A model generated the notes under the pieces. It was not told where the DNA came from. It made no database searches and was given only the letters and a program-made list of their open reading frames with translations. A stretch of DNA of 57,052 bases, the filler included, from Bipalium vagum (Eukaryota), in the NCBI GenBank assembly GCA_037834085.1. It is 3 parts of 3 records of this genome, joined end to end, with 100 filler letters (N's around TTAATTAATTAA, not from the genome) between each part and the next. Parts side by side here need not be neighbours in the genome. Positions count along the whole stretch, not along the records: positions 19,016 to 36,866 come from JBBMKC010048790.1; 2 more parts are not named here. The stretch is one strand, 5' to 3'. Positions 19,016 through 36,866 of this stretch are shown here, one piece after another. The position numbers and the translations under genes were made by a program. The stretch's first letter is position 1. The number at the start of each line of letters is the position of its first letter.

Positions 19016-20289
19016 CATTGCACGATTATACCTTGATCTCAATACATTTCAATGAATATACTCTTCCAGGCATAAAATCTGATAATTCGTCATCTTTAAA
19101 AAACTATTTTGTTTAAACAAAAATTAGTAAATATCAATATTGTTTTGTATAATTTCATTATTTTTTGAGGGTTATTTTATTTACTGAGTATTTCCAAAAT
19201 AAAATTTCAGGGAATTTTTAAATTACTTTTCGAGTGTTAATTAATTTTTCATTATTAATATTATTAACATTATTATTATTATTTCTAGTCTTTTATGATT
19301 TTACTTAGTTATATTTCCCCTGGGATGGTCTTTTGTCGGACTGTAGATCATCCATAAGCAACAAGATATGACCACCGCCCCATTCATCATGGAAGATCAA
19401 AATCTAAAAAATAAATCTTGTCAAATTAAGTCTGAAAAATAATCTGGGCTGTGTGGATCTGTGCAGACTCCCACCTTCTGACCAACCAATTCAACCAAAC
19501 CCTTCAAAAACGTCAATCCAGCCAAAGCAATCAAAACAATAACATTATCGATTTTAAACATTTTAGTGATTATTTAGTGATTATTTAGTAATTCATTTGA
19601 TGTATAAAAAACAATATATAATTTGTATTTATTTATTTGTAAAAGTTAAAACCCGGAGTTTGATTCTAATAATTTTCTATTAACTCTTTGTCTCGGATTT
19701 TAACTTAAAAGTAAAATTGTATTTAAAAAATAAAGTTGTTAGATTTATATAAAAAATATATTTTATAAAAAGCAACTTTTTATCTCAGTTAATCGATTGA
19801 AATTTTATCGTTTTAAAAGTTTTTAGTTTATCAATTTAAAAGTTTAAAAAGGTTTTGAAATCAGTATCTGTGAGAAGTTTACTTTTAGTAATTAAAATTT
19901 TAACTTCGAACGTACGCTTACTAAATCCTTCTGTATTTGCATATATTTTATGTTAAGTTCCTAAAAAGACCACTATCGATATTCTTAATCCGATTAAATA
20001 TTAACAATTATTTTTATTTTCATAATAAATTATCTTTTTAGGTCGTTTTAAAATTTAACAGATCAGTATAATTTCTCTTCTTCCCGCTTGCACAGAGAAA
20101 GGATATTGAAAGCCACCCGATCACCTTTATAGAAATATTAGAAGTGTTAAAAATGTTATTTTAGAAAAAATAAAAGAATTTAAAATTTTAAACATTAAAT
20201 TTTTTTTAAAAAGTGCAAGCTTAGCTTTTGAAATTAAAGGTTTTGAGTCCTTTTAAGATTGTAAAAACAAATACATTACTAGAGCTTTT

Positions 20290-20660
20290 ATGTAAATATG
20301 GAATTAACTCAACTAAAAATTTTGATTTAACTGATATTGCTGAAGAATTAGAAATGCATTTAAATGCTTTAATGAAAGATGAAGTAACAGAAAAAAGAGT
20401 TAAATAGAAATTCCATTAATTATTAATTATCAAAATACAAATCAAAAAGAAATTCATTAGGTTTGTTATTTTAAAAATTTTTACTTTCATTCCTATGGTT
20501 TATCACCACTTGAGGATTTAACAGAAAATTTAAATGAGTACAACAAATTAGATTTTCAATCTGAAACAGATTTCGAGTATTGTGAACAATAATCCACATA
20601 TGTTTTATGGAAAATTTTTCAGGGAGAAAATAAAAAGAAATTTTAGAAGAAATAGAAAGA
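20290..20660 (+). pseudogene. Second adenain copy (degenerate)
   Basis: CKYGINSTKNFDL..INYQNTNQKEIH*VCY..FHSYGLSPLEDL..FQSETDFEYC; collinear with 18425-18830. Confidence 0.85.
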
Positions 20661-20773
20661 ATTAATTTTGATCTAACTCCATAATTGCCTTTATTTAGTT
20701 TTTCTCTAACCTCTTTTCAATATACTTCTTCAGTTCACAAGGGTCATCTTCAAAGGAAAGATTTTTAAATATT

Positions 20774-21437
20774 GTACACTGTTTAAATTGAAATAAAACA
20801 GTTTTCGCATTTTTTGGTAAAAAAGTGACCTTAATAGCGACCACAAAAAAATTAATTAATTACACTTTTTGTTTTTAATATATTTCCATAATTTATAATT
20901 CTCATTAAAAAGAAATACAAATAAATATCGAAAATCTCTGGAAAAATAAACAAATTATGATAATTTTATGTCAACGTAGAGACCCATTGATTTTTTAAAT
21001 TGTTGCAGAAATATCACAGTTTTATAAATTTAAATAAAAGTGACTTTGACTTCCTGAAAATGGTAATTTTTATTTTATTTTAGTGATTATTTTTCAATCT
21101 GAAACGTTCCTCACAGAGAATGGCAAAATCGGAAACACAGCGCACCAATGGGGTCCAAACAAAGTATCATTTTTCATAGATTAGGGCTTTCGTGACCCAA
21201 AGGCCAGTTGTAAACCAGGACCTGCTCTGCTCTCATTTTAGTCTTTACTTTCAGTGGTTGCACAAGCTTAATTTGCATACATATGTCCGTCCACAATGCT
21301 CGGTAAGAACCTCCACGAATGACATTGATAATTGTCAGATTTTTTTCGAATATTTTATTTAATAAAATAAACATTTTCATTAGTGCTCTCCTCGGCTTAT
21401 TTTGGTGAATCTTTTACATTTCAATTGCGACAGTTTA
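20774..21437 (-). mobile_element. Deleted Tc1/mariner-superfamily element with imperfect TIRs
   Basis: tacactgtttaaattgaaata (20774) versus the reverse complement taaactgtcgcaattgaaatg (about 21437); internal IKLVQPLK and NWP..SPNL fragments. Confidence 0.4.
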
Positions 21438-22281
21438 TTTTGTTGTCATTGTTATAAGGGTAGTATTGGTAGAGTAGGAGTGCAAAGGTGATCGGGTGGC
21501 TTTCAATATGCTTTCTCTGTGGAAGTATCATGAAGAGAAATTGTAATGATGCACACAGCACATTATATTATTTTTCAGATTTAATCTGACGAGATTTATT
21601 TTTTAGATTTCGACCTTCCGTGATGAATTATACGGTGCTCATATCCTGTTGCCTATGGATGATCTTGAGTCCGACGTGCTATTGTAAAACATCTTACTTT
21701 ACAGGTTAGAAGATATTCAATTAGAAAAATGATAACTTACGCTGTAAAGATATTTATATTCGAAGATCACTGTTCTACCTCATTTCATTTCTAACCAAAA
21801 GGAGACAACCCTTCTTCACAGGACTTCTGTAAAAGATGTAATGAAAAATTTCGCAGATTTACCACATAGTTACGTTTTTGATCTCTCTTATACTCACAAG
21901 CTTGTTGATTCAAAACCAGTTTTTCCTTGTCATTCCTGTACTTTTAACAATATATTTTGTTTTAATTGATGACTTTTTTATCTTTACTTTAAATGCTTAC
22001 ATTGTACAACGACGCTTAACGCTTGATATAATTATGAAGGGTTACTTCATATCTTTGTTTGTGGTTGATGAGTTTCATTTCATTTGTTCTACTCCTTTTC
22101 TTTTTTCACTTATATCTCTACTTTTTCATCAGCTTACTTGTGTTTCTTTTGCACATATATCAGAAAAACATATTTCTGATAATATGATACCCCAGGGTCC
22201 AACATTAAGTAAAAACGTCGAAAGAGTAACATCTGATATCAAATTTTATAACGAATAAAAAATATACGAATCCTTTTTCAG

Positions 22282-25200
22282 AAATAGAAAAATGTACCAT
22301 GAATAAACTTGGGAGGGAATACATTGGCACTAAAAACGTGACTAAAATTGGACATCACTGTTTATATTGGAGCAAAAAATTGCTGAAAAAAATTGATGGA
22401 AATAAAATTGAGGGCATCAATCCCAAAATAGATAAAAACTACTGCAGAAACCCTACCAATTTTCCTAATGGACCTTGGTGCTTCATTGATTCAAAAATCT
22501 CCGAATGGGAGTATTGTGATATCCCTCCATGTATAAAGGGTGAGAAGGACTATTAATTAATAATGATTAATCGAAATTATAGAACGAAATTGGTGTAAGG
22601 AAACTGCTTCGGGCTCCGAATATATTGGAACAATGAAGGTTACAAAGTCCGGCAAGGTCTGCCAGCCGTGGATCAATCAAAACAAACATCCTGCTGAATC
22701 ATTTCCGGAAAGGAATTTGGAAGACACGGAGAACTTTTGCCGAAATCCAACCAATGTTGATTCAGGACCCTGGTGTTATGTGGATGACGGATTTTTGACA
22801 TCGGAGCGTTGTGATGTCGAAATGTGTGAAGACGGTAAGGGACTGATACGGAAAATTGAAACATAATAAAGGTCTTGTTAGAACTAAGCCAAATTGAATA
22901 TTTCGGAGGCTATGATTACTTGAAGACGATTCCGGATAATCATCAGATAATTTACTTCAACCCCATGTTAGTAAACTTTACAATCACTGTGGAAATCAAG
23001 TCGGGTAATGGAGACGTAAAGTGAACCATATTGTTATGATGCATATTATAGATTTATGGAACGAGGATGTGCAAATGAAGACTTCTCTATGGATATCAGC
23101 GTATGATTATAAGTGCCAGAAAGACCTAAATGAATACAATTATTGTTCAAAATCTTTCTTCACTCTGAAAAACAACAAAGTGATACTGACTTACCGTTGC
23201 AATTCTGTTACATATTCATCAATATTTATCTCCCCCATAAATAAGGAGGAATGCAAGCTCAGCTACAAAATTTACGAAGTATATGATGTTGATAGTCAAC
23301 CAAGTCAAGTCTACCTGGATTATATTGAAAAGGTAAAGAATAATTAATGTACTATACTCTTAAAATATAAGCAAGATATCACTTTGAGTATCGCTTTTGG
23401 TAGTATAACACAACGAGATTTACCATGTACCTGATATACTGATCAATAACTTGTAGTATTAAACGTTTGCTTCGAAAAGTTTTATTTAACGGCTCATTTG
23501 CTGATAATTTCATTGTATCTTCTTTCATTTTGGTTGTGAGATTTAAGGTTCTGAAAGAATTGACAAACCTCTGTTGCTGTCTCTCTCAGGTTTTCCATAT
23601 TGCATAAATCAGCTGTATAATTAATGACTATTTCGGTCGCAGCATGTGAATCTCTTCCAATAACATTCGACTCTTGGTTTTTGAATCCATAACTTTCCTT
23701 CCACCGTTCTGACCAGACCATCTTTAAAACGGAAATAAGATGTAATTTTCTTTTCAATATCTTCTTTAATCTGATCGATTTCATTTTCATTATTCTGCCA
23801 TTTATACACTGCCTTTTCTTTACTGTTTTTATATCTAGAATGCTGAGATGTTCATCTACGTGAGAAATTATGGTGTTATTAGCTTTTTTGTCTTAAACCT
23901 GAATTCTATTGCTTTGTGATCTGTTCTCAAAAGTAATGCTTAAAGTGGTTACAAAAATAATATATTGCTAATAGATCCTTTCTTGTGATTTAGTATCATT
24001 TTTCATTTACTGTTCATTGCATGTGATCCATACGCGATCACTCTCTCTATTCTACTATCGGTGATCTGTGACAACATTGCTCCAAATTTGTAGAGTTTGG
24101 GTGATGGTCTTAACCTTTCATTTTGACATTACTAATGTGGAACAAATGCCAGACAATCTTTATGGGGCAAAATATTTCATTACGGAAGACTTAGAGAACG
24201 CATAATTCCAAATAATATTAATAAAAGAGCTGCAGGAGAAGACGGACTTTTCTACTAAAACGGACAATAATACTTCACAAGAATACTTTTTGATATTGCC
24301 GCAGTGCCAGGAACGTTCCAGTAATTATTGACATACTTATGAGATGGGTTAGAAGGACCAGTGTTGTATAAAAAATTTGACTACAATCAATAAGCATGAT
24401 GAAGAGATAAAATACGTCATGAAGGAATAATGAATTCTTAGATTTTGAATACCAAAGGTTGTTTAGGTTGACATTTTCAAGTTTTTTGTATTTAGAAACT
24501 TTAGAAATTTGATGGACTCCATGAATATAGAATTGCAATTTCCGAGCCTGTATAATCATAATACTATCGGAATCATAAGAAAGACAATTCCGTACAATCA
24601 AAGATTGCACTAATGTTTCTCTACATGATGATGATTGGAGGAATTTGAGAACGAGCATACCAGATATTAAATAAACAGGTAGAATATCTGGCGACAAAGA
24701 GTAAGGCTGAATGTTTTGAAGGAAGGCTGAAGTTAGCATTTCAGAAGAGGAAAACAAGAATTGAAAAAATTGAGGAAGCTCTTACTTACAGAAAAGTAAA
24801 TGATACTACAGATCTTTTTGTCTCGAAGATTATAGCAATGGTGAAAAGAATTTTGTCGAAGAATCTGGGTGAAGAGAAGCTGACAAAACATCTGCTTTTA
24901 CACTGTGGTAATGCGCAAGGCAGATATATCAGAGGAGATTGTCGAAATCATGAAGATGGTCGACAAAGTAGAAGAAATGGTCAAAGTTTTAATATCGTAC
25001 GAAGGGCCTCAAAGTATGGAAAAAAACATCAGATATGCAGAAGAACCGTCCATATTAGTAGAGAATGTCCGAATAGACCTAAACCAGACTGTTTAGCTTG
25101 CGGAAAGATTGGCCACATTAAGCGACACTGTCTAATTATAATATATACAAAATGCAAAAGGACTGGACGTTGATCTGAGTCATGTAACGAAAATCAAGAA

Positions 25201-28200
25201 TACGAAGAATTGCGAGTAATGGAGTGGAATTTCAGAAACGAGATTTTCGAGAGACTCCGTACAAGAATATCATGGGTAGATTAACGTTTCAGATGGCGAT
25301 CTCAAATTGAGGGCTTCCTCAGGAGTGAAGGTAATAGAGGCCATCAATTAGTTTTACGTAACGAATGTTTGAGTAGATTTGTTGCATATTAAATTATGGT
25401 TTTCGAGCCCATACTACCCGATAAAAAAGGCCAAGTCGAAAGGCAATTCAGGGAAATTCGTGATCTTATCAACGTGACATTCAAGCAAAGAAAGATGTTT
25501 AGTTTGCGATCATTGCTACGGTCTAAAAATCTACGGGGATAAGCCCGGCATAAAATGTTTTGGCAGGAAAATTTTCAGGGAAAACTGGATGCTAAGTATG
25601 GATTTGAGGAGCAGAATGAGAAAGACAGAAACCAAACTAAGTGTGCCCCAAGTCTCAACTGTTAGAATATTTGCTGTCGGAATCAACGTTCTCATAAAAG
25701 CAGAGAACAGGAACATGGAACAAGATCAATATATTGGATGATACAAAGTGATCAGAAAAATTCATGATAGAAGATATGAAAGGGAGGAGCAATCAGGGAA
25801 ACAAATCGAGAGAAATATAGGGAAGAATAAAGAAATTTCTAAAAAAGGGGTTATCAGAAATTAATTATTTAATACCTTAATAAGTGGTTTGTTAGCTGCG
25901 ATATCAACAAAGTCAGTCATTTTGAACAATATATTTTTGCATGGTTTTTAAAACATTAATACTTAAACAAATTGTCCATTCTTAATAAATTAATATATTG
26001 TGCCAATAAAAATTATTTTAAAATTAATATTAAAATTAAATTAAATAAATAATAAAAGTAAATTTACAGTTAATTAAAAATTTAAAAATTAGAAATCAGT
26101 TTCAATAGTCACATCCCCCTTCTCAAGAATTTATTTACTTTTCCAAATTCCTTTCTATTGGTTTTCCTTCTCTATCTTCCAATGCATATACCCTGTCATG
26201 AATTTTCTGTACACCATGTATTGACCTTCGTATCTTTCTTTTTCCTTAGTTCTGCCTTCGGCCATCACAAATACTTGTTTCTCAGGTTGAACTTTCTTTT
26301 TTTTGCTTCAAATTCAATTTCTGGTAACTAATTTTCCCAATCATTGTTTCTTCCCTCAGTCATAGTACTATTCATGTAGTCACAAATTGTTTTGAATTGC
26401 CGTTCTATTATGCAGTTGGTGTTATGGTGATACGGACCGGTAAAACACAGTTTTGCTTTACTCTGTGTGACTCTAGATTCAAAGAGCTTTACACAGTCTA
26501 CATGGATTTCCTTTAGTACGCCATTTTTCCATTTTATTATTATTATTTTTTCATTGTTCTTCCTACACAACTGTTCTAACATTCTTGATTTTTTTGCATA
26601 CCCATTGCTAAATTTTTGATAATAATTACAAATGCCCAGAAAGCTTCTTCAATTATTTACGTATTTTGAGCTCTCCAAGGCTTTAATTGCCTCAATTTTT
26701 GCTCGGTCAGTTTTGATTCCTTGTTTGTCAATTACATGTCCTAGAAATTTGACTTCTGTTCTTAGTAGATGGCATTTCTCTGGGTTCACTCTAAGTCCTG
26801 CTTCTTTATTATTCTTTAGCACTTCACTTAATACGGTGTAATGATGTTCTAGATCATTTGTGTGAATCATAATATTATCTAAATAGACCATCGTATTTTT
26901 CAAAGTTCCTAAACCCTTCGTGATTAGCTCCTCATAAGTTCTGGTGTGGGCGCCATGTTAGCTGTGATATCAACAAAGTCAGTCATTTTGAACAATATAT
27001 TATTGTGAGATTTTAAAAACATTAATACTTAAAAAAATTTTCCATTCTTCATAAATTAATATATTGTATATATAAATTAATATATAATAAATAAGACGCC
27101 TTGGAAAAATAATAAATAATATTAATGAAATTATTATCAGTAATATTTGTCAATTATTATTACGTTTACATTTAGAACAAAAGATATTTGAGTGATCTGA
27201 CTGACATCGGCTCATTGTCACCCACTCCAAATACCGGCTCCTTCAACGCCTATCTGGGCAACGCCATTCCATTTGCAGTGTCCTCAGACTCCAGAGTTGT
27301 GCTCACTATTTCGGAAGTAGGAGAGGGTCGTGTTGGTTTTGCAGGCTCCATCAAATACTTGGATCCAGAATATGAATTCGACATGAGACATTTTTATCAA
27401 AAGGTCTTCGGTGACAATCATGCCAAACCTGAAGAGTTGACAAAAGAACTAGTACAAGAATTGTTTTTACAAATTATTCGCCATGAACCTCTAAAATCCT
27501 CTGTCATATGGAATTGTCACAACTCCATTGGAGTATTACATATTGAGAAACTGCTGGAACTAATCAAGCGCGGACTGAAAATCGTTATTGCCTTTAACCC
27601 GAACTTCTTTGATTTCAGAATAGAGGATACAGAATTCTTCCCCATTTTGAAGGCCGCTGGCATCTGGATAAATAATTTTGATTTCGAAGGTAAAGTGGAC
27701 ATTTTGGTTGAACCTGATTTGAAGACTTTACCCTTGGTTCACTTATTACATTTTGCATCACAAAATTATATAAAACTTTGGGAAACCACTGTTTACATTG
27801 AAGCCCGTATACGGGATATGCCCGATTGGATCTTCACGGAGAATACGATGTCAAATTCTTTAAATGACGACTTGAAAAAATTTTATGACATTTTCTTGCC
27901 CATAGTTGAGTGGGCTATACCTTGTTATGATATGAAACTTCGACATAAATTTTATATAGATACCTTGAGAGTGTATGGATCAATGCTAAAAAAACCACTG
28001 CAACCGGGTTTGGAAGCTCCAGGGGTTGCAGTTTATCCGGGAAAGATGTATTCTGAGACGATCGACTTTATTAATGTTAAAATGAGGGTAAACACTAAAT
28101 TTAAGTCAGAGGTCTATCAGCTCGGACTGTTTTCGAGTCCTGGAGTTGAATTTTCTGTGAAAATCAAAAGTCTCAGGTCCACATATTGCTTGTTACACAT

Positions 28201-29404
28201 AAACTTTCAGTCTATTGAAACTGACTTTCGTCGAAATTTGATTAAGTGGCCTTATGTAAAAACAAACTTTACTTTGCGTAATGATACGAGGAAGAAAATA
28301 ACAACGGGTTTCGGAGGTCTTTTGTCATTACAATGCAAAGAGGATGAAGATATTGTCAACATTCACCTCACTAATGTAATTCAAGCTACAATGTTTGATA
28401 TTAGGGACAAAGATCTAGCCAAGAACTGGACTCATCTCCAAAGGCTCAATACACCTTGGGCGGTTGTCGCTGCTGATTCTGTGGTATTTGTTGTGCCCTC
28501 CTATGCTATTCGTAACATAGCTGACATTAAATCCGTCATGATCCTATATGATTTAATGATCAAGGAAGAATTGCACTTGAGAGGAAGGTCCATCCGGAAT
28601 CGTCGAAGAGATGTTGTATCTACAGATATAGAAATATCAGACGGATATTTCCAAGCTGGCTACCCTATTCAATCTAGAATATCTTATTACACAAATCCCA
28701 AGGATGACATGTATTTGTTTGATATACCAAGAATAAAAAATAAAGGTTCCTGGAGTATTTTGCAAATGGTAGGACATAATCTAAAAAGCAGTTTATTCAT
28801 AATACCAGGTACAAATGACTTAATGGATAATATCTTTACTTTGGTCGCAACGGAATCAGTCACTGGTCAGAGCTCATGGTTACCAAACGAAGGCTGGGCT
28901 CAAGAAGAAGATATCCTCAATTTAGCAGTTACATACATCAACAAAGAAACTTTCTCCGAATTGATATGGAGAAGATATTTACCACTCGCAATCTTTGCTC
29001 AACTTCGAAATAGTTTCGGCTGGGAATTGTACGCTCAGTTATTTCGTCGCTATGATATTATAAGTCAAGAGACGACATATTTATCACCGGATGCAACAAT
29101 TCAAACTTGGATAAACGAATCGTCTTTCATTGCCAGAATGAATTTGGTTCCTTTTTACGATTTATGGCATTGGCCCATTGACCAAGGCTTGAATGAAAAG
29201 CTGTCTCAATTTCCCTATTTTATGCCAGACGATTTTCTTACAAAAGAAGTTGTTGAAGCGGTTGAAAAAATCATGGACAAGTATGGCGGAGCGAAACACT
29301 TCAAACGATATCCCATCCCCATTCCAATCATAGTTGGTCCTGCCTTAAATAAATTGACAATTGAAGGGGTCAGGGTTATAGAAGAAATGACAGTTTTCCA
29401 TTGA
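22282..29404 (+). CDS. Kringle-kringle-unknown domain-TCAF/FAM115 (M60-like) protein; exons 22282-22539, 22583-22834, 22882-23004, 23052-23332, 27176-29404; 5' exon(s) not located
   Basis: Two kringle exons (NYCRNP..GPWCF..WEYCDIPPC; NFCRNP..GPWCY..CDVEMC) flanked by phase-1 introns of 43-47 nt. Phase-0 donor AAG|gtaaag at 23332 joins phase-0 acceptor tttag|AAC at 27176, in frame with the 738-aa ORF. Confidence 0.72.
23400..25889. mobile_element. Nested gypsy relics inside the large intron (minus-strand pol fragment 23450-24120; plus-strand gag/IN 24500-25860)
   Basis: Zinc knuckles CRRTVHISREC / CLACGKIGHIKRHC; integrase SSPYYP..GQVERQFR; PPT-like aaaaaagggg near 25841-25850. Confidence 0.75.
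25890..27067 (-). mobile_element. Miniature internally deleted gypsy element with two LTRs, PBS and PPT
   Basis: About 110-bp direct repeat 25890-26001 / 26956-27067; 3' LTR 26113-25890 is TG...CA; PBS TGGCGCCCA at 26955-26947; PPT GAGAAGGGGGA just before 26113; RT (YLDN) and IN (IERQFKT) fragments. Confidence 0.88.
27176..29404 (+). CDS. Large terminal exon: TCAF/FAM115-like M60-like peptidase domain, zinc motif degenerate
   Basis: Intact frame with PGVAVYPG, YQLGLFSSPG, TGFGGLL, PWAVV..VVFVVPS, DIEISDGYFQAGYPI, LAIFAQLRNSFGWELY, NLVPFYDLWHWPI; the HExxH position reads QMVGH. Confidence 0.85.
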   Translation, partial: NKRYLSDLTDIGSLSPTPNTGSFNAYLGNAIPFAVSSDSRVVLTISEVGEGRVGFAGSIKYLDPEYEFDMRHFYQKVFGDNHAKPEELTKELVQELFLQIIRHEPLKSSVIWNCHNSIGVLHIEKLLELIKRGLKIVIAFNPNFFDFRIEDTEFFPILKAAGIWINNFDFEGKVDILVEPDLKTLPLVHLLHFASQNYIKLWETTVYIEARIRDMPDWIFTENTMSNSLNDDLKKFYDIFLPIVEWAIPCYDMKLRHKFYIDTLRVYGSMLKKPLQPGLEAPGVAVYPGKMYSETIDFINVKMRVNTKFKSEVYQLGLFSSPGVEFSVKIKSLRSTYCLLHINFQSIETDFRRNLIKWPYVKTNFTLRNDTRKKITTGFGGLLSLQCKEDEDIVNIHLTNVIQATMFDIRDKDLAKNWTHLQRLNTPWAVVAADSVVFVVPSYAIRNIADIKSVMILYDLMIKEELHLRGRSIRNRRRDVVSTDIEISDGYFQAGYPIQSRISYYTNPKDDMYLFDIPRIKNKGSWSILQMVGHNLKSSLFIIPGTNDLMDNIFTLVATESVTGQSSWLPNEGWAQEEDILNLAVTYINKETFSELIWRRYLPLAIFAQLRNSFGWELYAQLFRRYDIISQETTYLSPDATIQTWINESSFIARMNLVPFYDLWHWPIDQGLNEKLSQFPYFMPDDFLTKEVVEAVEKIMDKYGGAKHFKRYPIPIPIIVGPALNKLTIEGVRVIEEMTVFH

Positions 29405-29899
29405 AACATTTTATTTATTTGTTCAATGTTTTTGTTTAAACGGTTATGGTAAATGTTTTCAATAAATTTTTATCTTTCACTTAAGTAAAAGAGAGTAAAA
29501 ATGTAAATTTAGCACCATGTTTATGTTCCTGTTATATCGCTATTACTATATATTTATGACGGCAGTAAAACCAAAAAATCGAAAAAAATATTGATAAATA
29601 TATTTGTGAAGTTCGTAATAAGAATATATCAAGATATTATAAGCAATCTAAACAAAATGCAATTTTAAAATTACATGAATATCAAAAAAATATTTTGTCA
29701 ATGTCAATTAAAAGAATTTAAATATTAAAACAAATGGTTCTATAAATTAAAATGATTATAATTATTAAATGTTTTAAGATTATAATGTTAGGTATTGAGT
29801 GCAAGCATTCATTGATAAGGCAGCTGATGAAATTATAGAAAACAAAATAGATATTTAGTAATTTTCGTTTAAAAAATCAATTTTATTTTAAAAAAATGT

Positions 29900-30465
29900 A
29901 ATAATTTGAACTTAGAAAAAATAGATATCATCAAGATTTAACAGTAAATATGTGATTAATTAGAAATTTGTTTAAATCCAAAACAGCAAAAAATTTAAGT
30001 AAAAATGGAAATTTAACTTTTAGTTTATTACTAACTGCAAATACTTTGGATTTATCAGAAGCAATTTTTGTTTTTTGTATTTGAAATAAAAAATATAAAA
30101 GCAGATGAAAGAATAACATTTCAGAATAACTTTTTTCCTTTTTTATTTTCTAATGTAGTTTTAAAATTAGGATCAGCAGAAGTAGAAACAATTGAATATT
30201 TAAGAACTACAAATTCTATAAAAAATTTTGTATTAATTGATGAAAATGATGATGGAGACATTTTTTGGATGGCATTCTGATAAAATTAAAGAAGATCCTA
30301 ATATAGGATTTAAAACAAGAAAAAATTATATTCAAATAAAAAATTTATTGGTGAATTTCTTTTAAAATTAATGTTTGGATTTTTACAATTATTAATAATT
30401 ATATATAATATGCAAGTAGAATTAACTTTTTCAAGAAACCCAACATATAAAGATTCGATAAAATA
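29900..30465 (+). pseudogene. Major capsid (hexon-like) protein, N-terminal half
   Basis: NLSKNGNLTF..LDLSEA..NNFFPFLFSNVVLKLGSAEVETIE..GW..NIGFKTRKK..LKLMFGF..VELTFSR..DSI; matches my recollection of the Polinton MCP pattern. Confidence 0.65.
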
Positions 30466-30870
30466 GAATAAAATATAATACCTATCATAGAAATAGAAAA
30501 CAAGAAAATCCAATTTTAAAACTTCAACAAAAATTATATACCAGTTTAAGTAGATGTTTAAGAGAACGGAGAGAATATGAACAAATAAAAATGTTAATCG
30601 GATGTAGTTTTGATTTTATATATGAGCTGATTGAGTTTCAATTTTATTATGGAATGACATGGGAAAACCAAGAATGTTTTAGGCATATTGATCATGTTCT
30701 TCCAGTTTCTTAATTTGATTTTGAAAATAAAGATCATTTTAAAATATGTTGGAATTGGAAAAATTTAAGACCATTAAGATCTGATAAAAATCTAAAAGTA
30801 ATAAAATTTATTATAAAGAATATTTATTTCAAGAAATTAAATCAAAGTATGCTGAAAAAGTATATAAATA
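30466..30870 (+). pseudogene. NCLDV-type HNH / endonuclease-VII-like protein fragment
   Basis: LIGCSFDFIYELIEFQFYYGMTWEN..HIDHVLPVS*FDF..ICWNWKNLRPL..KNL. Confidence 0.7.
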
Positions 30871-30929
30871 AGAAACAGAAATATTTAAAAATTATTTAAA
30901 ACTAATAAGATAAAAGATTTTTAAGAAAT

Positions 30930-31580
30930 TTCACTTTTTTTGCTTTAATGTCAAAATAAATCATCTTTTCACCTTCAAATTTTATTTCCTTAAATGTTTC
31001 ATGTAATAAAACACAATTCATAATTCCTTTAAAATCATTATCTTTTTCAATAAGCAAAGTAATTGTTGCTTCATTGATACATAAATTATTTGCTTGATCC
31101 GTTAAAACAAAACAAAATATAGAATATAAATTTTGAAATTCTAAGATACTTAATTGTGGATCGTTATTAAAATATTGACAAGAACTTACATAATTTAAAT
31201 TTCACTATTGTAACATTTTTCAAACTTTTTTGGTTTTATAGGATATAATGAATCAACAAGTTGAACTTGAACGATTTAATTTTATTTAAAATAAACAAAC
31301 TATTATTTTTTGTATAATCAAAACGTGTTTCTCTTAAAGCAACAAATAAATAAATTGGAATACTAGGAATATTATATAATTGTAAGGTTTGAGTTGTACC
31401 ATCTGTTAAATTTAGTTCTATACAGTTCCTATTTAAAAAAATCAATATTAATATTTTTACCATCTGTCATTCTAGAGACCAGATTTAATTTTGCGTTATT
31501 ATTTAATTTTAATGAAGGAATAAATAATAACAATTTTTAAAATTTAATTTACTCTCATTTGGTTCCCTAAAATATTTTAT
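30930..31580 (-). pseudogene. Major capsid (hexon-like) protein, C-terminal half
   Basis: KLLLFIPSLKLN..INIDFLNR..PIYLFVAL..NNSLF..SLYP..EFQNLYSIFCFVLTDQ..ITLLIE. Confidence 0.65.
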
Positions 31581-32393
31581 TAAAAATTTTTTCATAATAG
31601 TTATCTGTAATTCTTTTTTGCTTTTTTAATTTATTTAAAAATTTTAAAATTAGATGATCAAGATTATCATGTCCTGATTTTTTAGCTGCTAAATATTTGT
31701 TTAATGCTACAAATTAAACAAGAGTATGTTTTGGTTTGTAAATTTTATAACCTTTTCCTGCTTTTTTCTATTTCATCAAGTTTGGTTATTTGGCTTTTAG
31801 TAAGTTTTATATAATTAGAGTTCATTGCTCCTTTATTATAGTTTATTAGATATACATAATTATTCAAATCTTTTAAACTATAATCTCTTGTCCAGTTAGT
31901 ATAAAATATTTTACTATAATCTTCACCTTCAATTAATGATTTTATACCTTTTGATAGTCTAAAATTAATTTCTTTACCAATTTTAAATAACTCAAAAGAT
32001 ATTTTATTTGTTGTTAAAATATTATTTTTTTATTGAAGATAATAATGTTGGTGGTGATTCTTGATTAATACAAAAATAGTTTTCTAAATTAAAATCTTCA
32101 TATAGTGGTGGTTGATCAATTTTTTTATTAAAAATATTATCAGTTGTTTCATCAATTAAATTCTCAGTTTTAATTTTCTCTCTTTTTTCAGGTTTTTCCA
32201 ATAATTTTTTATTAGCATATTCTAAATCTTTTATTTTTTCAGACGTTTTAGTTTCAATAACTTTATTCTCATCTTTCATATCTGCTTGTCTACGTTTATC
32301 GATTGCACCAGTAACAGGTTTATGAAAAATTTTTAAATCTCGTTGTATTCCATTTTGTAACTCCCATTGATTTATTATTTTATTATTATATTC
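31581..32393 (-). pseudogene. Polinton conserved ORF with C-terminal LAAKKSGHDN motif
   Basis: Coiled-coil N-terminus with IFHKPVTGAID; C-terminal LNKYLAAKKSGHDNL resembles the LxASxxAGN/H motif of Polinton ORFs. Confidence 0.5.
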
Positions 32394-32604
32394 ATTTTAT
32401 ACTGCTATTAATTTTTTTAATATTTCAATTTCATTTTTACTATCAATTAAATTTTGTTTTTTTGAAAAAAAAATAATTATATAATCTTACTATACCAAAA
32501 ATCATAAATATCTTGAAGAGAATAGATTTCAATATATTGTAAGAGAGAAAAATTTTCTAACAAATATAAAATTTTACTTAATTACAATTTTTTTATTAAA
32601 TATT

Positions 32605-33299
32605 TCATTGATTTTTTTCAAAAGAATGTTTATTAATTTTTCTATTAATATTTTTCAGTGTTTTTCGATTCTCTTTTTTAAATTCTTTTTTAAGTTCATT
32701 TTTTGATTCATTATTTATTTTTTCAACAATTTTATTTTCCTTAATTTTTTTAATAATTTCTTTACAGTCATTAATAATTATTTTTGCTTGTTCAATTTCT
32801 TCGTTAGTTAAAATTTTATCACCATAAGCTTTCATTTGAAAAATATATAGTTCACTAACTGAATTTTCTATTGATTCACAAATTTCTCTATAAAGATTTT
32901 TCTTTTACCTGTAATATTTTTACTAATTGTTTTAGTAATAAATAAATTTAATGCAGTAAAAATTGAAGTACTAATAGGAATATAGATAGCTAATCCAATT
33001 TCTAAAGTAGAAACTCCTGGTATTATTGCAGATCAAACTCAAACAATTCCTGTTACAACATTTGTTCCTTATTTTAAATGAGAATCTATTTTAGTATATT
33101 TAAATTATAATTTTTTATAATGTGTTAATAAGTCTTCTAAAACTTTTTTTTCATTCATAAAATTTTCAATATTTAATTTTGCTAATTGATCTATTAAAGG
33201 ATTTGAAAATCTATCAGATTCAAATTTTTCATCTTCATAAAATTTATTTTCTAAATTTGGATATAGTTTTGCAAAAGGAGCAGTTGGCTCAATTTCCAT
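32605..33299 (-). pseudogene. Polinton membrane protein with N-terminal PTAP/LYPNL, hydrophobic hairpin and KAYGDKILTNEE motif
   Basis: ORFs 33105-33299 and 32605-32835 are linked by a hydrophobic stretch (AIIPGVSTLEIGLAIYIPISTSIFTALNLFI) with stops and frameshifts. Confidence 0.6.
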
Positions 33300-33499
33300 T
33301 TTTTAATATAAATTTTGAAAAAAACTTTAAAGATTTTTTAAATATTTTATATTGTATAAAATTTAGAAGAAGTCTCAGAACGGTACATTTTAACGTATAT
33401 TTGGATAAAACTTTTTCAAAAAAATTCAATCTCTTCCATTTCACTTTTGAATAAATTTCTTTTAAAAATCATGAGTTCATAAATTTTTATATTTTTTAA

Positions 33500-34385
33500 A
33501 TTAAATTGAAATTCATACTTTTTATTTGATGGAAAAATTGTTGATTTTTTTTCTTAATTATAGAAAAAATGTAAATATGTTGGAAAATTAAGTACATTTT
33601 CAAAATATTAAATCGGTCCCGAATTTAGATTCTGTTACTTCTGTTCGTCCTATTGATTTTCCATTAACAAAAAAATAATTCCTATTATGATTATATCAAC
33701 CAAAAACATGATATTTATTTTCTGTTCCAAAATTTATAATATTATCTCTTTTTAAACAATTTTTTCTTCAACTAATATTATTGTAAAAGGTTCAATTAAA
33801 GAATAAGAAATATTTCCAAAAAAAATATCCATCATTATTTGCAAATATTTAGACCATGTATTATTTATTTATTTTTAATATTAGTGATTTCCAAAATGAA
33901 TGCCAAATATTTGGTTTAAAAGTTTCATTTAATTTTTTGTAATCATCTTCTGCATAAAAGATTTTTAATTTTGAAATATATTTTTCCGATTTTAGTTTTT
34001 CATCGAGAAGTTCTTTTTCTATATTTTTATTTTTTATTTTTCATTCATTTAAGTTATTTTCAAATTTTTTAATATTAATTGTTTTATCATTTACATTCAT
34101 TGTTTTTTCACTTCTTATTATATTTAATTTATCATCTATATATTTTTTATTTACAACATCATTGTATTCAGTAGGATTTGAAATATTTATTATTTTATTA
34201 TTATTCATATTTAAAATTTCTTTCATGGAATCTGCAGTAACATTTAAAAATTTATTTTCACTTTTATTTCTAAAAAAATTTACTTCTTCTTTTATTTCAT
34301 TTTCTTCATCTTCATCTTCATCATAATGAGTTGGTATAAATATATTCTCCATTTTCAGCAATATTAACAAATACTTGCTCACCAA
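33500..34385 (-). pseudogene. Fibre-like viral protein
   Basis: LNMNNNKIINISNPTEYNDVVNKKYID matches the NKIxNLxxPxxxxDAxNKxYVD repeat of viral/phage fibre proteins; 3' limit uncertain. Confidence 0.5.
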
Positions 34386-34419
34386 TATTTTTAATTAAAT
34401 TTTTAATTATAAATTTTTA

Positions 34420-34775
34420 AAAAAAAGCATGTTCTTTTTCTTCTAAAGATTCCTCAAATATTTTATTATTATATAAATGATATAAAACATATAAAGATAA
34501 TTGCCCACAATATTCCAAATTTGTTTCAGACTGAAAATCAAATTTGTTGTATTCTTTTACATGTTTTTCTAAATCTTCATTTGGTGGTAAACAGTAAGAA
34601 TTAAAGTAAAAATTTTTATAATATCCAACCCAATAAATTCCCTTTTGATTTTTAGCTTGATAATTAATAATTTATGGAATTTCTTTTTAACTCTTTTTCC
34701 TTTAACTTCATCTTTTATTAAAACTTTTAAAGGCATTTCTAATTCTTCAGCAATATCAATTAAATCAAAATTTGT
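34420..34775 (-). pseudogene. Third adenain copy (degenerate)
   Basis: NFDLIDIAEELEMPLK..INYQAKNQKGIYWVGY..YFNSYCLPP..FQSETNLEYCGQLSLYVLY. Confidence 0.85.
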
Positions 34776-35224
34776 AAATGATCTAAATATTCAGTAAACA
34801 TCATTATGTAATTCAAATTGAATTGTCTCATTAGCTCTGTATAAGAAAAATTAAATTCTCCAGCTAGATAACTGTAGATAAATATTTTTATTTTTTTAAT
34901 TATTTAATTTTCGATTAAAGTATTTTCTTCAAGTATACTCATTTTTATAAAATATAAAAATAAAAAGTCTTAATAGTATGATACTAAAATGAAATATTTT
35001 TATTTTTTTAATTATTTAATTTTTGGTGTATCTTAGATATACCATATTAATTTAATTAAATAAATATATTGTGCAAAAAATAACTAAATTGGAATTAATT
35101 AATTTAACTTAATTTAATATTTTTAGATAATTTAATATCTTTAATTTAATTAAATATACTATAAAAAAATAACTAATCTGAAAAAGTCATCTTTAATTCA
35201 TTAGTTTTAATTACTCAAATCCTT

Positions 35225-36110
35225 TAAAAACTACTTCTGTGAAGTTCATTTTCGTAAAAGCGTCCTAAAATCTTTTCTCCCTTTAAATCCATAATTCCAT
35301 AAACGATTGAAGTCGTAAAATAAATTTCATTTGTCCATTTAGCAGTATATCTTTTTGAAATTTATTTTTATATTTAAAAATTCTTACATGATCTCCAAGA
35401 TAATATTTTGATTTTAAATTTAATTGAAAAATAGGGGAAATTATATCAATTGTTGTAGTTTTTAAACTTTATGATTTTTAGAGGCATCATTAGTTGAAAT
35501 ACCAATTGAACTATGAATTTTGTTATTATAAAAATTAGATAAGTTTGGTAAAAGATGTAACCATTTTCGATTTGCCTGTTCCGTAAATTTTTTAAGCATA
35601 AACTTTTTTTAGAGTCTATTAAATCTTTCTGTTACAACTGCTTTTCCCTCATTCTCTGTTTAGTAAATTTCTTTTTCGTTATCATAACAAAATTCTTCAA
35701 AGGTTTTATTGTAAAATTCTGTTCCTTTATCGACCCAAAGTTTTTCTGGAACTCTATTAGAATCTTCAAATATTTTTTTTAAAGCATTTGTAATTGATTG
35801 TCCTGATTCATGTTTTAAAAGAATAGCAAAAGCAAAACGAGTATATAAATCAATCACTGTTAGAATTATTTTATAATCTTTTTCTCCAGGAACAAAAGTT
35901 AAATCTGCAGATCAAATAGCCTTTTTGTTATTTATTTTTAAGAAATTTTGAGGTTTTCTAAATTGTTTAAGAAGTTCATTTGCTAATTGTTTACTTTTTT
36001 CTGGTAGTAAACGTTTTGAATTTTTGAAAAGTTTTTCATTTGCTATATATTTTTTTTGAAGAAATTCCATGTCCTAATCCAGTTTTTCTCTTGGAGTTGG
36101 ATTTTGAATA
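35225..36110 (-). pseudogene. Polinton rve integrase copy (PLA2 part deleted)
   Basis: LANELLKQFRKP..SADLTFVPGEKDYKIILTVIDLYTRFAFA..KLWVDKGTEFYN..VTERFNR..GRFYENELH. Confidence 0.9.
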
Positions 36111-36866
36111 CTGTATTGAATATTATATTACAGATAATTATAACTAAAAATTTATTAAAAATTAATTATTGACTTTTTTTAAAAAAATGATAAATTTTCC
36201 TTCGTAAAATTTTAATTTCTAATCTTACTTCATTTATTTTAAAGTAATTATAAATAATTATATCATTCAGATTTTCATGTTGTTTTTTTATTTTATCTTT
36301 ATATGGGTCAAATGTACAATTTTCTTTTAACCTTAATAAATCTTTAGAATAAGATTTTAAATCTTTTTCTTCTAAATTATGTTTTAAAACTCTTATTTAT
36401 TTTTATTTTTTATTTATTTTTTTATTTATATATTTTATATATGACACATAGTTTACCTCGTTTATAAACACGTTTTTGACGAACGAATGAGTGTGCTTTC
36501 CGAATCAAAACTCCTACTATCTCTATCAAATTCAAAACTGTTAACAAAACCAAATATATCTAAACAAGTAAAATTAGAAATATGTTGTCTAGAAATAAAA
36601 TAACCAAACAAACCATACGAATCAAATTATATCTAATATAAATAATTATAACTAATTATATCCGAAAAAAGATTGCCAACCATAGAATAAATGAAAGTGC
36701 CAATAGCACTACAAAAACAGTTGAGATAGTATATCACTTGAATTGTCGATTTCTAAGAAATCGATTACCATCAATGCGAAGCTTGACACAGAAGAAGCGC
36801 GTTTTAAATTTTTTAAAAAACATTGGCTTTATCAAGTCAATATTCAATATGGAAACTTTAAAGGAC

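What the first reader, a model, noticed from the sequence alone, without database searches (positions are those of the whole stretch)
22282..29404. Spliced kringle-kringle-M60/TCAF gene: unusual domain architecture hidden across a TE-filled intron
Seen: four small exons (two complete kringles, then about 135 aa of an unrecognised Cys-containing domain) splice in frame, via a phase-0 donor at 23332 and a phase-0 acceptor at 27176, onto the 2.2-kb M60-like exon. That ORF has no ATG start (the track uses TTG), which fits a terminal exon. Known: kringles are extracellular binding modules usually paired with serine proteases or receptor kinases; animal TCAF/FAM115 proteins lack kringles; microbial M60-like mucinases carry carbohydrate-binding modules. 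Inference: exon shuffling produced a probably secreted kringle-M60 protein, an architecture I do not recognise from described proteins.
Basis: partly seen in the sequence, partly recalled or inferred. Interest (0 to 1): 0.8.

Follow-up and report, generated by a model that had tools for sequence, protein, structure and literature searches.

The report
Kringle-kringle-TCAF/M60 gene, dead active site
An invertebrate-type gene joins two kringle modules and a small orphan domain to a complete TCAF/M60-like metallopeptidase body across a 3.8-kb intron full of retroelement debris; this domain order has only one other database example, and this copy has lost its zinc-binding catalytic motif.

Summary
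Pfam finds complete kringles in exons 22282-22539 and 22583-22834, and Peptidase_M60 in the 742-codon exon 27176-29404. All proposed splice sites are GT-AG, and the model is in frame with no internal stop.

No RNA data exist; the only run holding the stretch is DNA. Indirect support is strong:
- One public protein (P0001, UniParc, 919 aa) carries the end of kringle 1, kringle 2, the exon-4 domain and the M60 body in one chain. It is collinear at 41-57% identity, with the same spacing at the junctions.
- The M60 exon opens directly after a TAG and has no Met before residue 70.
- All 12 indels in related copies fall in predicted introns.

The architecture is real but very rare. P0001 is the only kringle carrier among the 150 best of 1039 relatives.

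- The terminal exon alone is a whole TCAF-like protein (AF2 pLDDT 90.5, fold of IMPa).
- HExxH reads QMVGH here, the third zinc ligand is Asp, and the losses cluster at the active site. This copy is probably a non-catalytic binder.
- Exon 3 (22882-23004) has no counterpart in P0001, so it may be a cassette or lineage-specific exon.

Secretion is inferred only.

The parts
22034..22208 (+). Candidate first exon: ATG, hydrophobic N-terminus (possible signal peptide or anchor), phase-1 donor TAA|GTAAAA, 73-nt intron to exon 2. Unverified.
   Evidence: Enumeration of ATG-plus-phase-1-donor candidates upstream; frame check. Inference only; no RNA or homologue covers it.
22282..22539 (+). Exon encoding kringle 1 (phase 1 to phase 1), six Cys
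   Evidence: Pfam Kringle E 3.7e-19. PDB kringle matches. Last 30 aa are 57% identical to P0001 residues 1-30. Splice sites read.
22583..22834 (+). Exon encoding kringle 2 (phase 1 to phase 1), six Cys
   Evidence: Pfam Kringle E 2.6e-14. PDB matches. 42% identity to P0001 33-113.
22882..23004 (+). Exon 3: 41 codons, phase 1 to phase 1. Optional or lineage-specific; no recognisable domain.
   Evidence: Open frame between a good acceptor (CTTGTTAG|) and donor (CGG|GTAATG). No indel in related copies, while the two flanking 47-nt introns carry four. But no counterpart in P0001 and no Pfam hit.
23052..23332 (+). Exon 4: orphan 93-aa Cys-containing domain (phase 1 to phase 0)
   Evidence: 42% identity to P0001 116-208, with three conserved Cys. 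No Pfam hit, no word-search hit, Atlas hits at noise level, AF2 pLDDT 48.7.
23333..27175 (+). Intron 5, 3843 nt, GTAAAG...TTTAG, filled with retroelement debris in both orientations
24649..25170 (+). gag-like open frame with a CCHC knuckle, inside the intron (weak)
   Evidence: zf-CCHC E 0.052, below cutoff; motif CLACGKIGHIKRHC read.
26652..26957 (-). Reverse-transcriptase fragment inside the intron
   Evidence: RVT_1 E 1e-11. High-copy depth in X1. Flanked by 121-nt direct repeats at 25890-26010 and 26956-27076. X1 contigs skip 25920 to 27010.
27176..29404 (+). Terminal exon: complete TCAF-like body (N-terminal alpha/beta domain, M60-like_N, Peptidase_M60), 742 codons plus stop
   Evidence: Pfam. 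1039 HMMER relatives, the nearest named being animal TCAF homologues. AF2 pLDDT 90.5. Foldseek to IMPa E 1e-24, TMq 0.63-0.66.
28763..28777 (+). Degenerate zinc motif QMVGH in place of HExxH (H530Q, E531M). The third ligand position 548 (28817-28819) is Asp.
   Evidence: translation. 147 of 150 relatives have HE.GH. Column analysis. PDB alignment to 5ev7 HEVGH.
29461..29466 (+). AATAAA polyadenylation-like signal 57 nt after the stop codon

Best explanation
This is one real, multi-exon animal gene of about 7.4 kb, encoding 1064 or 1105 aa. Two kringle exons and a small orphan Cys-containing domain were added by phase-1 exon shuffling to the front of a complete TCAF/M60-like protein, which is encoded by a single 2.2-kb terminal exon. 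The last intron later swelled to 3.8 kb through retroelement insertions.

Kringles are disulfide-bonded extracellular modules, so the product is most likely secreted or surface-exposed. That differs from mammalian TCAFs, which act on the cytosolic tails of TRPM8.

In this copy the gluzincin centre is destroyed. HExxH has become QMVGH, the third zinc ligand Glu is Asp, and the conserved His of the GYMHxGYP motif is Gln. The fold-determining residues and the 742-codon frame are kept. The protein therefore most likely works as a non-catalytic binding protein (pseudo-peptidase): the M60 groove would hold a glyco- or peptide ligand, and the kringles would supply a second binding or anchoring function. 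Its two closest relatives (P0001, P0002) keep HExxH and may still be enzymes.

Shown: the domains, frames and splice signals, collinearity with P0001, loss of the catalytic residues, and a confident fold. Inferred: actual splicing, secretion, binding function and ligand.
For: - Domains.
- In-frame GT-AG model with no internal stop.
- P0001 has Kringle + M60-like_N + Peptidase_M60 in one chain. It is collinear with the window: K1 end 57%, K2 42%, exon 4 42%, M60 41%. Spacing is identical at the K1/K2 and K2/exon-4 junctions, and an NKR motif sits at the exon-4/M60 junction.
- The terminal exon opens right after a TAG, with the first Met at residue 70.
- P0002's genomic contig L001 has its ORF starting right after 'ttttag' at the same place, so the intron position is conserved.
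- All 12 indels in related copies of run X1 lie in predicted introns: 0 in 1988 exonic nt against 12 in 4012 non-exonic nt.
- AATAAA lies 57 nt after the stop.
- WIN, P0001 and P0002 form a 100%-supported clade beside the remaining TCAF-like relatives, several of them named animal TCAF homologues. The WIN tip is 1.06 against 0.53 for P0001.
- Active site: 147 of 150 relatives have HExxH and the window has QMVGH. Window-specific losses of conserved columns are 11 of 28 in residues 484-556 against 6 of 50 elsewhere, Fisher p 0.009.
- Fold is intact: pLDDT 90.5, pTM 0.88; IMPa, ZmpB, AM0627 and BT4244 matches.
- An inactive E326A AM0627 is crystallised with a bound glycopeptide (title of PDB 7yx8). 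This shows that M60 folds can bind without cleaving.
Against: - There is no transcript evidence. The only run holding the stretch is DNA-like and covers the introns.
- P0001 is itself a gene model, N-truncated and missing 35 conserved core residues, so it is not proof of splicing.
- Without splicing at 23332 the kringle frame would stop 5 codons later, so a separate short kringle gene is formally possible.
- Of 16 listed exonic differences to X1 copies, 11 are non-synonymous. This fits relaxed constraint.
- Active-site loss plus a long branch would also fit a gene on its way to decay.
- The signal-peptide exon is only a candidate.
- Neither kringle keeps the Asp-x-Asp of plasminogen lysine-binding kringles (alignments), so their ligand is unknown.
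Confidence: 0.72

Rival explanations
1. Decaying paralogue or young pseudogene. The architecture is real in the family, but this copy lost its catalytic centre, took up retroelements in its intron, and is no longer under selection.
For: QMVGH in place of HExxH, plus other active-site losses. The tip branch is twice that of P0001. 11 of 16 listed exonic differences to related copies are non-synonymous. 32 of 78 highly conserved columns differ, against 20 in P0001 and 13 in P0002. No expression data.
Against: A 742-codon frame, and 1064-1105 codons in all, has no stop in a genome where intergenic GC is about 20%. On a branch of about one change per site, neutral drift would have introduced many stops. 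Indels in related copies avoid all exons. The losses are concentrated at the active site rather than spread evenly (p 0.009), and Gly, Pro and Trp fold positions are kept. AF2 folds it with pLDDT 90.5. All splice sites are intact.
Confidence: 0.15
2. Two neighbouring genes. One is a small secreted two-kringle protein ending at the TAA at 23345-23347. The other is a separate TCAF/M60-like gene whose real first exon lies inside the 3.8-kb 'intron' or was missed.
For: Read-through at 23332 gives a stop after 5 codons, and ATTAAA follows at 23458. Most TCAF-like relatives have no kringle. No junction reads are available.
Against: P0001 joins the exon-4 domain directly to the M60 body, with matching residues at the junction. 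The exon-4 donor AAG|GTAAAG is phase 0 and the acceptor TTTAG| at 27175 is phase 0 and keeps the frame. The space between holds only retroelement fragments in mixed orientation. The conserved N-terminus of the TCAF body (aligned from residue 10-17 in P0002 and P0009) lies upstream of the first Met at residue 70.
Confidence: 0.1
3. Active secreted metallopeptidase after all. The enzyme would use an unconventional metal site (His534, Asp548 and other residues) and act as a kringle-targeted O-glycoprotease.
For: The fold and the second His are kept, and Asp can ligate zinc. The sister proteins keep HExxH.
Against: The general-base Glu is Met and the first His is Gln. All 40 aligned relatives have H and E in these columns, and 147 of 150 relatives carry the HE.GH motif. 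Further conserved residues near the motif have also changed: Q537K, H493Q, W541F, T542I and T550M.
Confidence: 0.03

Closest known systems
P0001 (UniParc UPI0005FFB7D8, 919 aa, unnamed, N-terminally truncated gene model)
   Same: Same domain order and collinear throughout: end of kringle 1, kringle 2, exon-4 domain, TCAF/M60 body, at 41-57% identity per part. Sister to the window in the tree.
   Different: It keeps HEVGH. It has no counterpart of exon 3. It lacks 35 conserved core residues, probably a model error. Its organism is not given by the tools.
Animal TCAF / FAM115 proteins (TRPM8 channel-associated factors; Lottia, Patella, Lingula, Brachionus, Branchiostoma, Limulus and Mytilus homologues)
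   Same: The terminal exon aligns over almost the full length of these roughly 700-aa proteins at 20-30% identity, E 1e-40 to 1e-50, with the M60-like_N + Peptidase_M60 layout. The Atlas names the P0001 neighbours TCAF_N + M60-like_N + Peptidase_M60.
   Different: None of them carries kringles or the exon-4 domain, and they keep HExxH. Mammalian TCAF1/2 bind cytosolic tails of TRPM8 (PMC4284226), which is hard to reconcile with disulfide-rich kringles. The window clade sits on a long separate stem of 1.67 changes per site.
Bacterial M60-like O-glycopeptidases (IMPa of Pseudomonas aeruginosa, ZmpB/ZmpC, AM0627, BT4244)
   Same: Same fold. IMPa matches nearly the whole terminal exon (Foldseek E 1e-24, TMq 0.63-0.66). 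The catalytic domains of the others match at E 1e-11 to 1e-13.
   Different: Identity is 12-18%. Those enzymes have the HExxH...E zinc site and carry carbohydrate-binding modules rather than kringles. The window protein lacks the catalytic His and Glu.
Kringle proteins (plasminogen, HGF, prothrombin, ROR1/2)
   Same: Canonical six-Cys kringles, with best PDB hits at E 1e-49 to 1e-54 for multi-kringle chains. The exons are phase 1-1, as in the vertebrate protease genes (established knowledge).
   Different: The partner domain is not a serine protease or a kinase. The Asp-x-Asp anionic centre of lysine-binding kringles reads T-N-F in kringle 1 and T-N-V in kringle 2 (alignments).

Membership tests
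Kringle (PF00051) | Profile score above Pfam gathering threshold | tested here: met
   69.2 and 53.8 bits against a cutoff of 34.3
Kringle (PF00051) | Six conserved cysteines of the triple-loop fold | tested here: met
   Both exon translations show six Cys at the aligned kringle positions
Kringle (PF00051) | Lysine-binding site (anionic Asp-x-Asp centre), which defines only the plasminogen-type subclass | tested here: not met
   Aligned to plasminogen 'NPDNDPQGPWC', the window has 'NPTNFPNGPWC' and 'NPTNVDSGPWC'
Peptidase M60 / M60-like (PF13402, gluzincin) | Profile score above gathering threshold for the catalytic domain | tested here: met
   88.5 bits against 25.8
Peptidase M60 / M60-like (PF13402, gluzincin) | M60-like_N accessory domain | tested here: inconclusive
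   22.5 bits against a cutoff of 23. The region folds confidently, and the model as a whole matches IMPa over nearly its full length.
Peptidase M60 / M60-like (PF13402, gluzincin) | HExxH zinc-binding and catalytic motif | tested here: not met
   QMVGH at 28763-28777. All 40 aligned relatives have H and E in these columns, and 147 of 150 relatives carry HE.GH.
Peptidase M60 / M60-like (PF13402, gluzincin) | Third zinc ligand Glu downstream of HExxH | tested here: not met
   Asp at residue 548, where 93% of relatives have Glu. P0001 also has Asp.
Peptidase M60 / M60-like (PF13402, gluzincin) | M60 three-dimensional fold | tested here: met
   AF2 pLDDT 90.5. Foldseek to IMPa, 4fca, ZmpB, AM0627 and BT4244, probability 1.00.
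Animal TCAF (TRP channel-associated factor) family | Full-length sequence relationship to TCAF homologues | tested here: met
   Nearest named relatives are all annotated TCAF homologues, with alignments covering residues 17-700
Animal TCAF (TRP channel-associated factor) family | TCAF_N domain (PF27016) | tested here: inconclusive
   Nothing was reported for residues 1-300 by the local Pfam copy. The Atlas lists TCAF_N for the clusters nearest P0001.
Animal TCAF (TRP channel-associated factor) family | Cytosolic protein that binds TRP channel tails | not testable with these tools
   The property is known from PMC4284226. Kringle modules argue for an extracellular location instead (inference).

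The most novel reading that the evidence does not exclude
A small, fast-evolving, lineage-specific family of secreted kringle-TCAF proteins exists in an AT-rich invertebrate lineage. Within it a former M60 O-glycoprotease scaffold has been turned into a non-catalytic, lectin-like mucin or glycoprotein binder, tethered or targeted by kringles. That would be an extracellular role for the TCAF fold unrelated to TRP-channel regulation, and a natural counterpart of the engineered inactive mucinases used as mucin probes.
Probability: 0.35. Interest if true: 0.55.

Novelty: new variant of a known kind. Interest (0 to 1): 0.42.

Why it matters
Animal TCAF/FAM115 proteins are known only as intracellular partners of TRP channels, although they keep the fold and the zinc motif of bacterial mucin-cleaving M60 peptidases. 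Their ancestral biochemical role in animals is open. A clade in which the same body is fused to extracellular kringle modules would suggest that at least some animal TCAF-like proteins work outside the cell.

The pair of an HExxH-bearing relative (P0001/P0002 type) and a QMVGH copy (the window) gives a natural enzyme versus pseudo-enzyme comparison that can be tested directly.

It is also a clean invertebrate example of phase-1 kringle exon shuffling onto a non-protease, non-kinase partner. For annotation, the gene is easily split in two by the TE-filled intron, and the one public relative is visibly mis-modelled.

Tried and rejected
- RNA evidence: the look-up of sequencing runs gave one run (X1). 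It proved to be DNA-like contigs covering the introns, so no splice junction could be tested.
- The look-up of encoding contigs has no record for P0001, so its locus could not be checked for an exon-3 homologue.
- The exon-4 domain stays unrecognised: no Pfam hit, no word-search hit, an AF2 model too poor to search (pLDDT 48.7), and Atlas hits at noise level (two earlier tries found the service busy).
- Exon 3: no Pfam hit and no match in P0001.
- Literature searches for kringle with M60, TCAF or enhancin found no paper on this architecture.
- A first frame check used a wrong end for candidate exon 1. It was corrected.
- A first local MAFFT run timed out.
All searches were exon by exon, by reference. 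The joined CDS was translated only inside scripts; one search printed only counts (length and number of stops), and the miscounted first try also printed the first 330 letters of an out-of-frame translation.
- Rejected: a bacterial or contaminant origin of the M60 exon. The nearest named relatives are animal TCAFs, the exon lies in eukaryotic intron-exon context, and its composition fits its neighbours.
- Rejected: exon 3 as a chance open frame. Its splice sites and the absence of indels argue against that, but it remains unconfirmed.
Full report
**What is in the sequence.** The piece (19016-36866) is AT-rich eukaryotic DNA. Intergenic GC is about 20% and the gene region is 31-45%.
- Pfam finds a complete kringle in each of two small open frames (E 3.7e-19 and 2.6e-14).
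- It finds Peptidase_M60 (E 7.3e-25) and a near-threshold M60-like_N in the 2.2-kb open frame.
- Both kringles carry the six cysteines and align with plasminogen, HGF, prothrombin and ROR kringles.

I read the following exon borders from the sequence:

| Part | Coordinates | Phase in / out |
|---|---|---|
| Kringle 1 | 22282-22539 | 1 / 1 |
| Kringle 2 | 22583-22834 | 1 / 1 |
| Exon 3 | 22882-23004 | 1 / 1 |
| Exon 4 | 23052-23332 | 1 / 0 |
| Terminal exon | 27176-29404 | 0 / stop |

The introns are 43, 47, 47 and 3843 nt, and all are GT...AG. AATAAA lies 57 nt after the stop. The joined frame has no internal stop and gives 1105 aa with exon 3 or 1064 aa without it. These totals include a candidate first exon.

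**Is it one gene?** No transcript data could be obtained. The single public run holding the stretch (X1) is DNA-like and covers the introns as well as the exons. The case rests on four indirect lines.
1. **A collinear relative.** The word search and the exhaustive HMMER search both give one close relative, P0001 (UniParc UPI0005FFB7D8, 919 aa, N-truncated). It has Kringle, M60-like_N and Peptidase_M60 in one chain.
   - It is collinear with the window exon by exon. The last 30 aa of kringle 1 are 57% identical to its first 30 residues. Kringle 2 is 42% identical to residues 33-113. Exon 4 is 42% identical to residues 116-208. The M60 exon is 41% identical to the rest.
   - The residue spacing at the kringle 1/kringle 2 junction, and at the kringle 2/exon 4 junction, is the same as my splice model predicts.
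   - Both proteins have N-K-R at the exon 4/M60 junction.
2. **No independent start.** The terminal exon's frame opens immediately after a TAG that contains the acceptor AG. Its first Met is residue 70, downstream of sequence conserved in relatives from residue 10-17. It cannot start a protein by itself.
3. **A conserved intron position.** The second relative, P0002, lies on a 2.5-kb genomic contig (L001). Its ORF begins right after 'ttttag' at the homologous place.
4. **Indels avoid the exons.** X1 holds several diverged copies, with 4-15 contigs per exon site, many only 90-95% alike. All 12 indels seen against the window fall in predicted introns and none in 1988 exonic bases. Four of them fall in the two 47-nt introns that flank exon 3. 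By chance alone this pattern has a probability of about 0.008.

P0001 is a gene model, not a cDNA, and it visibly lacks 35 conserved core residues. It supports the fusion but does not prove it.

**What the parts are.**
- **Terminal exon.** It is by itself a whole TCAF-like protein.
  - It aligns over almost the full length of roughly 700-aa relatives.
  - The nearest named relatives are all annotated TRPM8 channel-associated factor homologues of molluscs, a brachiopod, a rotifer, amphioxus and horseshoe crabs.
  - With 41 aligned sequences AlphaFold2 gives pLDDT 90.5 and pTM 0.88.
  - Foldseek matches IMPa of P. aeruginosa over nearly the whole length (E about 1e-24, TMq 0.63-0.66). It then matches the M60 catalytic domains of ZmpB, AM0627 and BT4244, and the B. 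anthracis protein 4fca/5ev7 (sequence match).
- **Family position.** In a quick maximum-likelihood tree the window, P0001 and P0002 form a clade with 100% support on a long stem (1.67). The window's tip is twice as long as P0001's.
- **Exon 4.** It is an orphan. There is no Pfam hit and no word-search hit, the Atlas gives only noise, and the model is unusable. Its only relative is P0001, with three conserved cysteines.
- **Exon 3.** It has good splice sites, an open frame and no indels. It has no counterpart in P0001. It may be a cassette exon, a lineage-specific exon, or an exon missed in P0001's model.
- **Intron.** The large intron holds a reverse-transcriptase fragment on the minus strand (E 1e-11) and a weak CCHC gag-like frame on the plus strand. 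It also holds 121-nt direct repeats and stretches at about 10,000 depth in X1, against about 400 for the exons.

Where 147 of 150 relatives have H-E-x-G-H, the window has Q-M-V-G-H at 28763-28777.
- The third zinc ligand is Asp in place of Glu at residue 548.
- The His of the conserved GYMHxGYP motif is Gln.
- Q537, W541, T542 and T550 are also replaced.
- Losses specific to the window, where P0002 keeps the consensus and P0001 keeps it or is gapped, hit 11 of 28 highly conserved columns in residues 484-556. Elsewhere they hit 6 of 50 (Fisher p 0.009).
- Gly, Pro and Trp fold positions and the whole frame are kept.

This is the pattern of a pseudo-enzyme rather than uniform decay. A 742-codon frame surviving a branch of about one change per site in such AT-rich DNA argues for continued selection.

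Against that, 11 of 16 listed exonic differences to X1 copies are non-synonymous. The sample is small, but it fits fast evolution or relaxed constraint, so a young pseudogene cannot be excluded.

**How it most likely works.**
- Kringles need the oxidising secretory pathway, so the product is most likely secreted or on the cell surface.
- A candidate first exon (22034-22208) supplies an ATG, a hydrophobic N-terminus and a phase-1 donor 73 nt upstream of kringle 1. It is unverified.
- Mammalian TCAFs bind cytosolic tails of TRPM8 (PMC4284226). A kringle-bearing relative therefore probably does something different.
- The M60 fold binds O-glycopeptides. An inactive E326A mutant of AM0627 is crystallised with one bound (PDB 7yx8, listed).
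- I therefore propose a non-catalytic glycoprotein or peptide binder, with the kringles as a second binding module.
- The kringles lack the Asp-x-Asp centre of lysine-binding kringles, so their ligand is unknown.
- P0001 and P0002 keep HExxH and may be active enzymes.

**Novelty.**
- Among the 150 best of 1039 HMMER relatives only P0001 has a kringle or the exon-4 domain.
- A word search with P0001's N-terminal 230 residues found only plasminogens.
- No large Atlas cluster combines the domains.
- No paper on the combination was found.

The architecture is thus very rare and undescribed, but it is present in one unnamed database entry. All the domains are known. I rate it a new variant of known kinds, of moderate interest.

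**Limits.**
- The organism is not identified. The nearest named relatives are invertebrate TCAF homologues.
- There is no RNA evidence.
- Everything was done exon by exon, by reference. The joined CDS was translated only inside scripts as a frame check.

Noticed in passing
window 29500-36866: Very AT-rich (18-25% GC) stretch downstream of the gene with mobile-element remains. There is an integrase core fragment (rve, E 3.4e-13) at 35663-35911 on the minus strand, and a sub-threshold match to a double jelly-roll-like domain (PF21738, E 1.5e-3) at 30035-30277 on the plus strand. By eye there is an HNH-like motif (HIDHVLPVS ... NLRPL) split over two frames at 30462-30896. Possibly a decayed Maverick/Polinton-like or other integrating element.
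   Followed up: partly
window 32022-34385, minus strand: Four open frames of 64-114 aa, rich in Lys, Glu and Asn, in DNA of about 18-20% GC where long open frames are unexpected. No Pfam family. They could be exons of a low-complexity gene or part of the element above.
   Followed up: partly
window 20304-20608 and 34482-34786: 305-nt inverted repeat (83%) whose arms bracket the whole kringle-M60 gene, 13.9 kb apart. Most simply two copies of a dispersed repeat in opposite orientation.
   Followed up: no
window 19335-19443 / 21567-21675 and 20062-20128 / 21484-21550: Two further inverted repeat pairs (86-87%) upstream of the gene. One alternative candidate first exon (21623-21704) lies inside such a repeat and is therefore unlikely.
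   Followed up: partly
window 25890-27076: 121-nt direct repeats (88%), 1066 nt apart, flank the RT fragment. Contigs of run X1 join 25920 to 27010/27011, with 11-26 other letters between the two sides. Related copies therefore lack or replace this 1.09-kb block, pointing to a polymorphic insertion or recombination between the repeats.
   Followed up: partly
P0001 residues about 700-702 (public protein): The public relative lacks 35 residues of the conserved core (the GYMHxGYP region) that both the window and P0002 have. It also starts inside kringle 1. The database gene model is probably wrong at an internal splice and cut at a contig end.
   Followed up: partly
window 22250-28249 in run X1: Each exon site is covered by 4-15 different contigs, many only 90-95% alike, and none carries the window's allele at the listed sites. 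The sampled organism is a close relative rather than the same strain. It probably holds several paralogues or haplotypes of this gene.
   Followed up: partly
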